Assembly (NCBI RefSeq): GCF_006345805.1 | Contig: NC_043017.1 | Span: 6,696,001-6,760,000 of the forward strand | Length of the DNA: 64,000 bases | Direction of reading: 5' to 3' | Source of the DNA: Octopus sinensis | Taxonomy: Eukaryota | Shown here: piece by piece, positions 58,455-61,106 of the stretch | Layout: each line of letters begins with the position of its first letter | Position numbering within the stretch: position 1 is the stretch's first letter | Notes under the pieces: model-generated | Told to the model about the DNA's origin: nothing | The model's input: the letters and a program-made list of their open reading frames with translations, nothing else | Database searches by the model: none | Program-made: the position numbers and the translations under genes

Positions 58455-58600
58455 TTATATATATATTTAAATATATATATATAAACAAAAATACACACAC
58501 ACACACACACACACACATACACATATATATATAATGTAACCGCGTGTGAATCGTTGGTGATTTCCGTCTTCCTTTTCTATTGGACTTTCCTCTGTCTCCT

Positions 58601-58635
58601 GTTTCTGAAGAAGAGCTCAGCTCGAAACGTTAAAC
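58601..58635 (+). ncRNA. Minimal type I hammerhead ribozyme motif (Penelope-type), copy 1
   Basis: GTTT-CTGAAGA-A-GAGC(TCA)GCTC-GAAA-C-GT-T-AAAC: helix I GUUU/AAAC, helix II GAGC/GCUC, palindromic ACGU helix III, GUU cleavage triplet. Confidence 0.6.
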
Positions 58636-58733
58636 CATCTTTCTTTCCTTTCCTGAGCGTTTTCTAATACTTTACATGTACCACGTCCTCGCGATGTTGT
58701 CTTTTTTGTGTGTGCTTGCTCTTCGAATTTGGG

Positions 58734-58812
<79 letters not shown>

Positions 58813-59695
58813 CAATCAAATCAGATAAATCCAATTAAAAAAATGAGAAAAAATATGATTATTTAGTGGATACTGAGTTTTGTATTAATAAATCACCTTT
58901 GATTTTTTTTTAATTAAAATTCCTGCGACTCAGATTAACTCTGGATAACCCCACCCCACCGTATACTTCATGAATTTAGAGGGTTTATATTTGCAATACT
59001 ATCCCTTTATTTCTCCACCATAGATGGGAATATTTGCTATCTTACTATAATTGGACGTTATGTCCATCTGTCTTTGTCGGTTCCCTCTTTACGGCCAATG
59101 TACATATTGGCGGCGAGTTGGCAGAAACGTTAGCATGCCGGGCGAAATGTGTAGCCATATTTTGTCTGCCGTTACGTTGAGTTCAAATTCCGCCAAGGTC
59201 AACTTTGCCTTTCATCCTTTCAGGGTCGATAAATTAAGTACCAGTTACGCACTGGGGTCGATGAAATCGACTTAATTCGTTGTCTGTCCCCTCTGTGTTT
59301 AGCCCCTTGTAGGTAGTAAAGAAATATATATGTATGTACATAAGTACATATTTTACATTAGCGAGTTTCTTGGGTGAAATGCTACGACCAGCAATCACAT
59401 TTTTTATTTATTGGTGTTTCTATATTTAATCAGAACAAGGCTGTTATTTGATGTTAGTGGCAGTGTATGGGACATAGATGTGACGTGCGTATTGTTAGTG
59501 TGTCTCCAATTATTTGATCAAAATACTTATACAAAACGACAGACACACATGAATGTATAACGGCATTTAGTTCATTATATGCTTACGAACTCCACATAAC
59601 CGTGTGTGCAGGCACATACACATGTGTGAATATGTATATATACATGTATACATTTGTATATACATATATATATTGTTTTTGATTTATTACTGCAG

Positions 59696-59797
59696 ATCTT
59701 ACGACCTTCATGCCAACGTTGTCATCCTACAGTCCAGACTTTAACAGATCAACGCCACATGTTACTAAGACCCCATTACATAGCACGACTAGCAAAG
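59696..59797 (+). CDS. Duplicated partial last exon ((D)LTTFMPTLSSYSPDFNRSTPHVTKTPLHSTTSK); optional cassette exon, or alternative terminal exon reading to a stop at 59848-59850
   Basis: Intact acceptor ttattactgcag; possible weak donor AAAG|gtacat gives a 102-nt symmetric exon; read-through gives GTSSSSFSIGLSSVSCF*. Confidence 0.5.
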
Positions 59798-59842
59798 GTA
59801 CATCATCTTCTTCCTTTTCTATTGGACTTTCCTCTGTCTCCT

Positions 59843-59877
59843 GTTTCTGAAGAAGAGCTCAGCTCGAAACGTTAAAC
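59843..59877 (+). ncRNA. Minimal type I hammerhead ribozyme motif, copy 2
   Basis: Identical to 58601-58635 and 1242 nt downstream of it. Confidence 0.6.
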
Positions 59878-59975
59878 CATCTTTCTTTCCTTTCCTGAGC
59901 GTTTTCTAATACTTTACATGTACCACGTCCTCGCGATGTTGTCTTTTTTGTGTGTGCTTGCTCTTCGAATTTGGG

Positions 59976-60015
<40 letters not shown>

Positions 60016-60899
60016 CAATCAAATCAGATAAATCCAATTAAAAAAATGAGAAAAAATATGATTATTTAGTGGATACTGAGTTTTGTATTAATAAATCACC
60101 TTTGATTTTTTTTAATTAAAATTCCTGCGACTCAGATTAACTCTGGATAACCCCACCCCACCGTATACTTCATGAATTTAGAGGGTTTATATTTGCAATA
60201 CTATCCCTTTATTTCCCCACCATAGATGGGAATATTTGCTATCTTACTATAATTGGACGTTATGTCCATCTGTCTTTGTCGGTTCCCTCTTTACGGCCAA
60301 TGTACATATTGGCGGCGAGCTGGCAGAAACGTTAGCATGCCGGGCGAAATGTGTAGCCATATTTTGTCTGCCGTTACGTTGTGAGTTCAAATTCCGCCAA
60401 GGTCAACTTTGCCTTTCATCCTTTCAGGGTCGATAAATTAAGTACCAGTTACGCACTGGGGTCGATGAAATCGACTTAATCCGTTGTCTGTCCCCTCTGT
60501 GTTTAGCCCCTTGTAGGTAGTAAAGAAATATATATGTATGTACATATGTACATATTTTACATTAGCGAGTTTCTTGGGTGAAATGCTACGACCAGCAATC
60601 ACATTTTTTATTTATTGGTGTTTCTATATTTAATCAGAACAAGGCTGTTATTTGATGTTAGTGGCAGTGTATGGGACATAGATGTGACGTGCGTATTGTT
60701 AGTGTGTCTCCAATTAGTTGATCAAAATACTTATACAAAACGACAGACACACATGAATGTATAACGACATTTAGTTCATTATATGCTTACGAACTCCACA
60801 TAACCGTGCGTGCAGGCACATACACATGTGTGAATATATATATATACATGTATACATTTGTATATACATATATATATTGTTTTTAATTTATTACTGCAG

Positions 60900-61078
60900 A
60901 TCTTCCGACCTTCATGCCAACGTTGTCATCCTACAGTCCAGACTTTAACAGATCAACGCCACATGTTACTAAGACGCCATTACATAGCACGACTAGCAAA
61001 GGTACATCATATAACAATGGAACAGCCCAAAGACTGCTTATATCAATATATGCCTTGATTCTTCTGGCCCTTTTGTAA
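60900..61078 (+). CDS. Terminal exon: Ser/Thr/Pro linker plus GPI-anchor-type signal ((D)LPTFMPTLSSYSPDFNRSTPHVTKTPLHSTTSKGTSYNNGTAQRLLISIYALILLALL*)
   Basis: Acceptor ttattactgcag, phase 1; small residues (N-G-T-A), a short spacer and a terminal hydrophobic run precede TAA. The joined CDS is 109+183+234+186+179 = 891 nt, in frame. Confidence 0.85.
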
Positions 61079-61100
61079 ACTCCTGTCCCTAAAAAAAATT

Positions 61101-61106
61101 AATAAA
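61101..61106 (+). terminator. Candidate polyadenylation signal of the chitin-binding gene
   Basis: AATAAA 22 nt after the stop codon. Confidence 0.5.

What the first reader, a model, noticed from the sequence alone, without database searches (positions are those of the whole stretch)
58567..61106. Tandem duplication couples a Penelope hammerhead pair to a GPI-less alternative ending whose stop codon is the ribozyme core
Seen: the 1.24-kb duplication copies the acceptor and first ~110 nt of the last exon but not its hydrophobic GPI tail. Read-through of the proximal copy ends at TGA 59848-59850, which is the UGA of the CUGAAGA core of hammerhead motif 2; the predicted cleavage site (GUU, after 59873) is 23 nt later. 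An identical motif sits 1242 nt upstream, on the sense strand of the intron. Established: minimal Penelope-associated hammerheads with a palindromic helix III are weak as monomers and cleave as dimers of tandem copies. Inference: the duplication may have created an in-cis dimer and three possible products: 296 aa GPI-anchored, 330 aa GPI-anchored with an extra linker, and a 288 aa secreted form whose RNA 3' end is ribozyme-made. Double cleavage would release a 1242-nt exon-containing RNA with 5'-OH and cyclic-phosphate ends that could circularise like a retrozyme RNA.
Basis: partly seen in the sequence, partly recalled or inferred. Interest (0 to 1): 0.8.

Follow-up and report, generated by a model that had tools for sequence, protein, structure and literature searches.

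The report
Duplicated Penelope hammerhead relic in octopus intron
A recent 1.2-kb tandem duplication inside an intron of an octopus sialomucin gene copied a genuine but minimal Penelope-retrotransposon hammerhead motif, a SINE and an unannotated exon-like segment; such motifs are common in this genome and nothing ties the pair to the gene's products.

Summary
The sequence facts hold. Units 58567-59808 and 59809-61012 are a 99%-identical tandem duplication. Identical hammerhead-like motifs lie 1242 nt apart. TGA 59848-59850 sits inside CUGAAGA. The 296/288/330-aa arithmetic is right.

The motif is a real Penelope-type minimal hammerhead. It meets the published criteria and is expected fewer than 0.003 times per window by chance. 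The same variant occurs in at least 120 metagenomic loci with covarying helix I, two of them just downstream of GIY-YIG endonuclease ORFs. A covariance model built without octopus sequence scores both copies at 38.9 bits.

The functional story is unsupported:
- The gene (Octopus sinensis "mucin-5AC-like X2", 443 aa) continues beyond the window into a conserved transmembrane, CD164-like tail.
It carries an in-phase donor, so it could equally be a cassette exon.
- The stop codon in the core is an unremarkable coincidence.
- The active fold is thermodynamically disfavoured.
- Published PLE hammerheads cleave poorly even as dimers.
- Conventional poly(A) signals are available downstream.
- At least six such motifs lie in these 64 kb.

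Most likely this is a passenger retroelement relic, duplicated with its surroundings.

The parts
58567..59808 (+). Tandem duplication, unit 1 (1242 nt)
   Evidence: Direct repeats D6, D7, D9, D10. Global alignment to unit 2 gives 99.0% identity with 12 substitutions and 3 indels.
59809..61012 (+). Tandem duplication, unit 2 (1204 nt; (TA)n is 39 nt shorter)
   Evidence: Junction is ...ggtacatcat-ct|tcttcc... with at most 1-2 nt of microhomology.
58601..58635 (+). Minimal hammerhead copy 1. Helix I 5' GUUU 58601-04; core CUGAAGA 58605-11; extra A 58612; helix II GAGC-UCA-GCUC 58613-23; GAAA 58624-27; palindromic C15.2-G16.2 58628-29; U16.1 58630; U17 58631 (predicted cleavage after 58631); helix I 3' AAAC 58632-35.
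   Evidence: Covariance model R1, built only from metagenomic relatives, scores it 38.9 bits, E about 2e-9.
59843..59877 (+). Minimal hammerhead copy 2, identical to copy 1. Predicted cleavage after 59873. Its U4-G5-A6 (59848-59850) is the in-frame TGA of the read-through ORF.
58535..58747 (+). Segment of about 210 nt carrying hammerhead copy 1, bounded by (CA)n/(TA)n upstream and (TA)n downstream. Interpreted as a 5'-truncated 3' end (pLTR part) of a Penelope-like element inserted in a microsatellite. The duplication breakpoint at 58567 cuts it 32 nt in.
   Evidence: Sequence. Same layout as the 41.2-kb copy, which ends about 115 nt after its hammerhead in AAATTT... followed by a TA/TG repeat. 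Literature: hammerheads lie near PLE 3' ends and (TA)n is a preferred target. Flank similarity to other copies is weak.
59094..59341 (+). SINE copy inside unit 1
   Evidence: 98.4% identical to the unit-2 copy; at least 25 related copies in the window.
60296..60545 (+). SINE copy inside unit 2
59696..59797 (+). Proximal copy of the candidate 102-nt phase-1 exon (DLTTFMPTLSSYSPDFNRSTPHVTKTPLHSTTSK). Acceptor ...ttactgcag|AT, donor AAAG|gtacat. If the donor is not used, the frame runs to TGA 59848-59850.
   Evidence: No deposited protein contains it.
60900..61078 (+). Distal candidate exon. It has the same acceptor and the same donor (61001|gt). Without splicing it reads on into ...GTSYNNGTAQRLLISIYALILLALL* (GPI-signal-like), with AATAAA at 61101.
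   Evidence: Unannotated.
42975..54549 (+). Annotated 5' part of the host gene. E1 42975-43083 (signal peptide), E2 46745-46927 (Cys-rich CBM_14-like), E3 50927-51160 (Ser/Thr-rich), E4 54364-54549 (CBM_14). All junctions are phase 1. Intron 4 runs from 54550 to beyond 64000 and contains the whole finding.
   Evidence: Spliced translation is identical to residues 1-237 of P0001, 'mucin-5AC-like isoform X2 [Octopus sinensis]'. Pfam CBM_14 E=1.2e-6.

Best explanation
Intron 4 of an octopus CD164/endolyn-like transmembrane sialomucin gene carries an old, 5'-truncated fragment of a Penelope-like retroelement. The fragment lies in a (TA)n microsatellite and retains an intact-looking minimal hammerhead motif.

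A recent segmental tandem duplication of 1.2 kb (about 1% divergence, blunt or microhomology junction) copied that fragment together with a microsatellite, a SINE and an exon-like 102-nt phase-1 segment. The duplication is a host replication or repair event, not a retroelement insertion structure. Its breakpoints fall inside the PLE fragment and inside the exon-like ORF.

The two hammerhead motifs are passengers. They belong to a ribozyme class that cleaves poorly even as dimers. Here they have the smallest helices seen in the class and a stronger competing hairpin, so any cleavage of the pre-mRNA is expected to be slight. The stop codon inside the core is a coincidence of reading into intron sequence.

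Shown: the duplication, the motif's class membership, the gene's identity, and the annotated continuation beyond the window. Inferred: PLE-fragment origin of the 210-nt segment, low catalytic activity, and no coupling to isoform choice.
For: Duplication and junction.

Motif class:
- Published min-HHR criteria (extra nucleotide between 9 and 10.1, G10.1-C11.1, palindromic 15.2-16.2, 4-5-bp helix I) are all met.
- The motif is rarer than 0.003 per window by chance.
- The same variant occurs in at least 120 metagenomic loci, about 1 expected.
- Helix I covaries there: covariation score 0.264 against 0.093 shuffled (0/500) and at most 0.10 when slid.
- L034 and L120 carry the motif 676 and 190 nt downstream of ORFs ending in a PLE-type GIY-YIG domain. 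L034 also has RT motifs upstream.
- An independent covariance model scores the octopus copies 38.9 bits.

Ordinariness: four further min-HHR-like motifs lie in the same 64 kb, at 41278, 30140, 18346 and 18194. One is 375 nt downstream of a GIY-YIG-like ORF.

Gene:
- P0001 is identical over E1-E4 and its remaining exons are absent from the window.
- Relatives P0002, P0003, P0004, P0013 and others all end in FDGASFGGG, a TM segment and a YxxPhi tail.

Weak ribozyme:
- The hammerhead fold scores -4.6 kcal/mol against -11.9 for a competing hairpin (58615-58620 pairing with 58653-58658).
- The double-hammerhead scores -7.3 against -22.3 for the best alternative dimer.
- The literature reports very low in vitro rates even as dimers.

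This gene already evolved by tandem exon duplication: 46412-47762 vs 54001-55475, 80% identity.
Against: - No expression or cleavage data could be consulted, so activity and exon use are inferred only.
- The core nucleotides are all intact in both copies, and a same-strand pair about 1.2 kb apart resembles the natural two-pLTR arrangement of PLEs, which has been proposed to allow dimerisation.
- The first 447 nt of the two units, which include the hammerhead, carry no substitution, while the remaining ~760 nt carry 12 (p about 0.004 if uniform). This is unexplained.
- Flank similarity between the 210-nt segment and other copies is weak, so its PLE origin rests on the motif class, the layout and the (TA)n context rather than on alignment to a PLE consensus.
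Confidence: 0.7

Rival explanations
1. The duplication created an in-cis double hammerhead that cleaves the pre-mRNA at 58631 and 59873. This would give a non-polyadenylated mRNA for a 288-aa secreted isoform and a 1242-nt exon-containing RNA that can be circularised.
For: - Two identical, core-intact min-HHRs lie on the sense strand.
- Dimer dependence of this class is documented.
- The natural two-pLTR spacing of PLEs is also in the kilobase range.
- Acceptor 59696 is as strong as the gene's real acceptors.
Against: - PLE min-HHRs cleave very slowly even as dimers.
- This copy has the minimal helix II (4 bp with a 3-nt loop, seen in 1 of 99 relatives), a 4-bp A/U-rich helix I and only a 4-bp intermolecular helix III.
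- The active fold is 7-15 kcal/mol worse than alternatives.
- A ribozyme-cut mRNA lacks poly(A). In the Clec2 precedent and in engineered ribozyme switches (my own knowledge) such cleavage lowers expression.
- AATAAA at 60090 and ATTAAA at 60037 and 60115 offer ordinary 3' ends.
- The exon is in no deposited protein.
- The family's conserved product is TM-anchored.
- The stop codon inside CUGA is expected noise.
Confidence: 0.05
2. Exon-duplication reading. The 102-nt segments (59696-59797 and 60900-61001) are internal phase-1 cassette exons. They splice on to the downstream mucin and TM exons, and the duplication simply adds a 34-aa Ser/Thr/Pro-rich repeat to the stalk. The hammerheads are removed with the intron.
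For: - Both copies keep the acceptor and the donor AAAG|gtacat.
- 102 nt preserves phase 1, as in every other junction of the gene, and the next annotated exon also starts with the D codon completed by G|AT.
- The composition is mucin-like.
- The gene already duplicated its CBM_14 exon in tandem.
Against: - X2 plus either or both 34-aa exons is not a deposited sequence.
- No relative shows the segment.
- The donor lacks G at +5, although three of the four real donors in this gene do too.
Confidence: 0.25
3. Assembly artefact. The two units are uncollapsed alleles or a gap-closing error, and the genome has one copy.
For: - 1% divergence plus a microsatellite length difference is in the range of allelic variation.
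- The uneven distribution of differences is odd.
- No independent assembly could be reached.
Against: - No Ns or contig edge nearby.
- The unit is much shorter than long reads.
- The junction is a clean novel breakpoint inside unique sequence.
Confidence: 0.12
4. The hammerhead-like motif is a chance match with no retroelement ancestry.
For: - Rfam finds no hammerhead even at E<=10.
- Genome-wide, about 0.003 per 64 kb still allows of the order of 100 chance hits (inference).
- Flanks align poorly to other copies.
Against: - It satisfies features not used in any search: the extra A, the helix I register, and the (TA)n-bounded layout.
- It scores 38.9 bits with a model built from unrelated organisms, 20 bits above the next hit.
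- The window holds four more class members.
Confidence: 0.03

Closest known systems
Minimal hammerhead ribozymes (min-HHRs) of Penelope-like elements (Cervera & de la Pena 2014, PMC4209133; Lunse, Weinberg & Breaker 2017, cited via PMC6765202)
   Same: - Type I topology and CUGANGA...GAAA core.
- One extra nucleotide after A9, and a G10.1-C11.1 pair.
- No helix III hairpin, but a palindromic A-CG-U that can only pair with a second copy.
- A 4-bp helix I and a UH cleavage site.
- Location about 100 nt from an element-like 3' end next to (TA)n.
   Different: - Helix II is at the lower limit (4 bp with a 3-nt loop, against 6-8 bp in the first description).
- There is no adjacent RT/EN body or second pLTR.
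- The second copy arose by host segmental duplication, not by PLE tandem insertion.
Metazoan non-LTR retrozymes (Cervera & de la Pena 2020, PMC7229834)
   Same: Direct repeats, each carrying a type I hammerhead. Double cleavage would in principle release a unit-length RNA with ends that RtcB can join.
   Different: - Retrozyme units are 150-450 bp, multicopy and mobile, mostly with canonical hammerheads that have loop-loop contacts.
- Here the unit is 1242 nt of host intron with a SINE and an exon-like ORF.
- There are only two copies, with a min-HHR.
Gene-embedded self-cleaving ribozymes: intronic HH9/HH10 hammerheads of amniotes, the CPEB3 HDV-like ribozyme, and the discontinuous hammerhead in rodent Clec2 3' UTRs (reviewed in PMC6765202)
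   Same: A self-cleaving motif on the sense strand of a pre-mRNA. In Clec2 the cleavage site lies between the stop codon and the poly(A) signal, as it would here for the read-through form.
   Different: Those motifs are conserved across species and fold as complete monomeric (or bipartite) ribozymes with demonstrated cleavage. This one is a recent retroelement relic with no conservation or activity data.
CD164/endolyn (MGC-24) type sialomucins with peritrophin-A (CBM_14) domains
   Same: Signal peptide, Cys-rich domains alternating with Ser/Thr-rich mucin stretches, then FDG(A/G)SFGGG, a TM segment and a short tail ending in YxxPhi.
   Different: The MGC-24 Pfam score (24.2 bits) is below its cutoff of 28.5. 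No GPI-anchored or secreted isoform is documented for this family in the data reached.

Membership tests
PLE-type minimal hammerhead (min-HHR) | Conserved catalytic core C3-U4-G5-A6-N7-G8-A9 ... G12-A13-A14 and a U16.1-H17 cleavage site | tested here: met
   CUGAAGA ... GAAA ... U-U in both copies.
PLE-type minimal hammerhead (min-HHR) | One extra nucleotide between A9 and position 10.1, and a G10.1-C11.1 closing pair of helix II | tested here: met
   An extra A (58612/59854) is followed by GAGC...GCUC. The extra nucleotide is A in 67 of 99 relatives.
PLE-type minimal hammerhead (min-HHR) | No stable helix III; positions 15.2-16.2 palindromic, so helix III forms only between two copies | tested here: met
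   A15.1-C-G-U16.1 = ACGU, self-complementary, with no loop.
PLE-type minimal hammerhead (min-HHR) | Short helix I (4-5 bp) directly flanking the core, supported by covariation in the class | tested here: met
   GUUU/AAAC, 4 bp. In 85 relatives, helix I pairs show 4 of 4 positions with double-sided changes, and covariation is 0.264 against 0.093 shuffled.
PLE-type minimal hammerhead (min-HHR) | Enlarged helix II (6-8 bp), as first described | tested here: not met
   Only 4 bp with a 3-nt loop. However, 38 of 99 relatives have 4 bp with a 4-nt loop, so the class tolerates short helix II. A 3-nt insert is seen in 1 of 99.
PLE-type minimal hammerhead (min-HHR) | Recognition by a profile built from independent members | tested here: met
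   Model R1 (85 metagenomic sequences, none from octopus) gives 38.9 bits, E about 2e-9, for both copies. The next window hit scores 18.9 bits. Caveat: the relatives were fished with a pattern derived from this motif, so only helix I and the loop are independent.
PLE-type minimal hammerhead (min-HHR) | Residence in the pLTR / 3' region of a Penelope-like element (RT plus GIY-YIG EN) | tested here: inconclusive
   No RT/EN lies next to 58535-58747; the upstream ORFs are mariner-type and unclassified. Relatives L034 and L120, and the window copy at 41278, lie 190-676 nt downstream of GIY-YIG ORFs. The segment is bounded by (TA)n, a known PLE target.
PLE-type minimal hammerhead (min-HHR) | Self-cleavage, dependent on a second copy | not testable with these tools
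   Energy calculations only: the active fold is disfavoured.
Canonical type I hammerhead (Rfam Hammerhead_1 and relatives) | Match to the Rfam covariance models (helix III hairpin, loop 1-loop 2 contacts) | tested here: not met
   No hammerhead family at gathering score in the window, nor at E<=10 in 58400-61200.
Metazoan non-LTR retrozyme | Short (150-450 bp) multicopy tandem repeat unit that is itself the mobile element | tested here: not met
   The unit is 1242/1204 nt with two copies only, and contains a SINE and host exon-like sequence. There are no other copies of the unit in the window.
Metazoan non-LTR retrozyme | Expression as linear and circular unit-length RNAs | not testable with these tools
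   No transcriptome access.
   ...SYNNG-TAQR-LLISIYALILLALL* fits by inspection, but no predictor was run. T-rich intron sequence readily encodes hydrophobic runs.
   It is absent from P0001 and from all 55 relatives. Exact look-ups of 6 spliced variants were negative.
CBM_14 / CD164-like sialomucin | Peritrophin-A domain(s) plus a mucin stalk, TM segment and YxxPhi tail | tested here: met
   Pfam CBM_14 E=1.2e-6 (28.9 bits, cutoff 22.1). MGC-24 scores 24.2 bits, below its cutoff. The tail ...YRFRKPTPDYEQL resembles those of relatives.

The most novel reading that the evidence does not exclude
A host segmental duplication has re-created, inside a protein-coding pre-mRNA, the two-hammerhead arrangement that Penelope elements normally need. 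The pair forms a double hammerhead in cis. It releases a 1242-nt exon-bearing RNA that is circularised by a tRNA ligase, and/or truncates the message after a premature stop to give a secreted form of a normally membrane-bound sialomucin.
Probability: 0.04. Interest if true: 0.7.

Novelty: new member of a known kind. Interest (0 to 1): 0.2.

Why it matters
If the pair were active, it would be a natural case of a retroelement ribozyme being recruited by gene duplication to make an alternative mRNA end or an exon-containing circular RNA. That would interest the ribozyme and circRNA fields.

As it stands, the value is more modest:
- It documents that PLE-type minimal hammerheads are dense in an octopus genome (at least six in 64 kb, several inside one gene's introns).
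- It gives a ready-made natural monomer-to-dimer pair, plus a nearby 152-nt tandem pair, for testing whether such motifs cleave in vivo.
- It shows that Rfam-based annotation misses this whole class.

Tried and rejected
- Rfam at gathering thresholds and at E<=10 found no hammerhead. Only microsatellite hairpins scored weakly, as mir-297/466-like matches, which I judged spurious.
- The first pattern syntax was rejected by the tool.
- A viral-contig scan for the motif variant found 0 hits.
- The look-up of encoding contigs for P0001 found nothing on record, so no independent or orthologous locus could be fetched.
- The exhaustive phmmer search found no closer isoform or orthologue than P0001 itself.
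- Exact look-ups of six spliced isoform models and of five mechanical ORFs were all absent. The five ORFs included two that span the duplication junction and their unduplicated controls. Because the controls were absent too, the junction test is uninformative.
- ARAGORN on 58500-61200 found no tRNA-like gene in the SINEs.
- Pfam on the ORFs just upstream (56492-56998) found no PLE domains.
- I first thought the candidate belonged to the same repeat family as the 41.2-kb and 30.2-kb copies. Outside the ribozyme, identity is only about 50%, and local alignment is significant only for one 12-nt box. I therefore claim the same class and layout only.
- One search was an erroneous call with a model that did not exist.
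- Lunse et al. 2017 is not held in the library.
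Full report
**Observation**

The region was read directly and scanned for repeats.
- Unit 1 (58567-59808) and unit 2 (59809-~61012) are head-to-tail copies.
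- A global alignment gives 1190 matches, 12 substitutions and 3 indels: a 39-nt (TA)n difference, one T, and one TG. That is 99.0% identity.
- The junction reads ...GGTACATCAT-CT|TCTTCC..., with at most 1-2 nt of microhomology. The window contains no Ns.
- The 27-mer CTGAAGAAGAGCTCAGCTCGAAACGTT occurs exactly twice, at 58605 and 59847, 1242 nt apart on the + strand.
The 288-aa frame stops at TGA 59848-59850, inside CUGAAGA.

All coordinates in the finding are therefore correct.

**Is the hammerhead real?**

Rfam says nothing, even at E<=10 over 2.8 kb. That is expected for motifs without a helix III hairpin.

[quoted passage not shown] The octopus motif, GUUU-CUGAAGA-A-GAGC(UCA)GCUC-GAAA-CG-U-U-AAAC, has all four.

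A descriptor encoding these features finds only the two copies in the window. It found 0 (strict) or 2 (relaxed) hits in 600 simulated 64-kb windows.

By my estimate about one is expected by chance. Judging by the contig names, many of these appear to come from host-associated samples.
- These fall into several sequence families whose helix I, which the pattern did not constrain, covaries: GCU/AGC, CCUC/GAGG, GCGU/ACGC, GUCC/GGAC, UUGC/GCAA.
- On an 85-sequence alignment, all four helix I pairs show double-sided changes. The covariation score is 0.264, against 0.093 in shuffles (0/500) and at most 0.10 when the partner is slid.
- In L034 and L120 the motif lies 676 and 190 nt downstream of an ORF that ends in a GIY-YIG domain (Pfam E=2e-4 and 6.5e-4). 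That domain has the two cysteines inside the core that mark canonical EN+ PLEs. L034 also has RT motifs upstream.
- A covariance model built from these 85 sequences scores both octopus copies at 38.9 bits (E about 2e-9), 20 bits above anything else in the window.

I conclude that the motif is a genuine member of the PLE min-HHR class. It sits at the minimal edge of that class. Its 4-bp helix II with a 3-nt loop is seen in 1 of 99 relatives, and U17 in 15 of 99.

**Context of the motif**
- Copy 1 lies in a ~210-nt segment (58535-58747) bounded by (CA)n/(TA)n and (TA)n. PLE hammerheads lie near element 3' ends, and (TA)n is a preferred target.
- The model also finds a degenerate copy at 41278-41317 (CUGUUGA core). 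It lies 375 nt downstream of an ORF (40685-40903) whose Y-I-G...R..EH stretch aligns with the L034 EN core (E=6e-4), and it is followed ~115 nt later by a TA/TG repeat.
- A sister copy lies at 30140-30179 (-). A second family forms two units in direct tandem 152 nt apart at 18194-18393 (-).
- So at least six class members lie in 64 kb, and the motif is commonplace in this genome.
- Outside the ribozyme, the candidate aligns only weakly to the 41-kb and 30-kb copies (about 50%, with one shared 12-nt box). I therefore claim the same class and layout, not the same family.
- No RT/EN lies next to the candidate. The upstream ORFs are a Mos1-type transposase and unclassified fragments.
- The duplication breakpoint cuts the 210-nt segment 32 nt in, and the other breakpoint cuts the exon-like ORF. 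The duplication is therefore a host event and not a PLE partial-tandem insertion.

**The gene**
- Exons E1-E4 (42975-54549) translate to residues 1-237 of P0001, 'mucin-5AC-like isoform X2 [Octopus sinensis]', without a mismatch.
- P0001 then continues DLSTPATTE... through a long mucin stretch to SFDGGSFGGG, a TM segment and ...YRFRKPTPDYEQL. These exons are not in the window. Intron 4 therefore runs past 64000 and contains the whole finding.
- Relatives found by an exhaustive search (P0002, P0003, P0004, P0013, P0023, P0030, P0032, P0041, P0043, P0044, P0046) share that C-terminus. Pfam gives CBM_14 and a sub-threshold MGC-24/CD164 match.
- The conserved product is thus a transmembrane, endolyn-like sialomucin.
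The 296-, 288- and 330-aa models are absent from a 15-billion-sequence collection, and so are X2 plus one or both 34-aa exons.
- The segment is nevertheless exon-like. It has a strong acceptor, phase 1 like every junction of the gene, and Ser/Thr/Pro-rich coding. After 102 nt it has a donor AAAG|gtacat that is present in both copies and would splice in frame to the next annotated exon.
- Read-through of the distal copy gives a GPI-signal-like tail followed by AATAAA at 61101.
- Terminal-exon, cassette-exon and pseudo-exon readings all remain open.
- The gene has an older tandem duplication (46412-47762 vs 54001-55475, 80%) that made its two CBM_14 exons.

**Would the pair work as proposed?**
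- In an 80-nt context the helix I plus II fold is worth -4.6 kcal/mol. A hairpin pairing 58615-58620 (GCUCAG) with 58653-58658 (CUGAGC) gives -11.9.
- For two 44-nt copies, the correct double-hammerhead topology (intermolecular helices I and III) scores -7.3, against -22.3 for the best dimer.
- In Cervera & de la Pena's assays a single min-HHR showed no detectable cleavage. Dimeric and trimeric constructs showed low activity, mostly at non-physiological Mg2+. [quoted passage not shown]
- A stop 17 codons into intron sequence is unremarkable. Ordinary poly(A) signals lie at 60037, 60090 and 60115.
- A ribozyme-cut mRNA would lack poly(A). In the closest precedent, the Clec2 3'-UTR hammerhead, the site also lies between the stop and the poly(A) signal. 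From my own knowledge, such cleavage is generally associated with reduced expression.
- Retrozymes are 150-450-bp multicopy mobile repeats. This 1242-nt host unit is not one.
- In fairness, a same-strand pair about a kilobase apart mimics the natural two-pLTR layout for which dimerisation was proposed, and both cores are intact.

**Verdict**

Its gene model and mechanism are not supported.
- Most likely (about 0.7) this is a passenger PLE relic duplicated with its surroundings in an intron.
- The duplication's main possible consequence is an extra or alternative 34-aa exon (about 0.25).
- An assembly artefact cannot be excluded (about 0.12).
- The functional double-hammerhead reading retains perhaps 0.05.

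**Unexplained**

There are no substitutions in the first 447 nt of the units, against 12 in the remaining ~760 nt.

Noticed in passing
window 18194-18393 (-): A second min-HHR family: CUGAUGA-A-(A/G)GCUG...CAG(C/U)C-GAAA(C/U)GUU with helix I ACAC/GUG(C/U). It is present as two units in direct tandem 152 nt apart (R1 E=0.004 and 0.05). Each copy has one defect: an A.C mismatch at 10.1-11.1 in one, and C15.2>U in the other. Even so, the heterodimer helix III can still pair through a G.U. This is a more classical dimer arrangement than the 1242-nt pair.
   Followed up: partly
window 40685-41440 (+) and 30020-30285 (-): A decayed Penelope-like element. A GIY-YIG-like ORF remnant (40685-40903; BLASTP E=6e-4 to the L034 EN core) is followed 375 nt later by a degenerate hammerhead (41278-41317, CUGUUGA, GAAAUGUA) and then a TA/TG repeat. 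A sister copy lies at 30140-30179 (-), 85-89% identical. Both share the A6>U core change.
   Followed up: partly
window 46412-47762 vs 54001-55475: An older tandem duplication (80% identity over ~1.4 kb) that produced the two CBM_14-like exons E2 and E4 together with their flanking intron sequence. All exons of the gene are phase 1-1, which favours exon duplication.
   Followed up: partly
window 58567-59013 vs 59809-60215: The first 447 nt of the two duplicated units have no substitution, only microsatellite and T-run length changes. All 12 substitutions fall in the remaining ~760 nt (p about 0.004 if uniform). Possible causes are gene conversion, polishing or chance.
   Followed up: no
window 55766-55933 and 60378-60545: A SINE family with at least 25 copies in the window. 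The copy at 55766-55933 is 100% identical over 168 nt to the copy in duplication unit 2, which suggests very recent SINE activity or conversion. ARAGORN finds no tRNA fold in the copies inside the duplication.
   Followed up: partly
window 58615-58620 with 58653-58658 (and 59857-59862 with 59895-59900): GCUCAG, which spans the end of the helix II 5' strand, loop 2 and the start of the 3' strand, is complementary to CUGAGC 22 nt after the cleavage site. This gives the dominant predicted hairpin. The box TTCCTGAGCGTT is shared exactly with the 30-kb copy and is 9 of 12 identical in the 41-kb copy, so an alternative non-catalytic fold may be a conserved feature.
   Followed up: no
window 55990-57495 (-), with 56492-56998 (+) inside: A Mos1/mariner-type transposase remnant (HTH_48, E=2e-7), interrupted by another element whose + strand ORFs (...KSAPGGDGVS..., ...EVGCRGF...) have no Pfam match. 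Further RT fragments lie at 52838-53790 (-) and 63807-63998 (-).
   Followed up: partly
window 59596-59685 and 60800-60883: Weak Rfam 'mir-297/mir-466/mir-1277' matches (about 38 bits or less, against gathering scores of 81-100). They fall on imperfect TG/TA microsatellite hairpins just upstream of the candidate acceptors and are almost certainly low-complexity artefacts.
   Followed up: no
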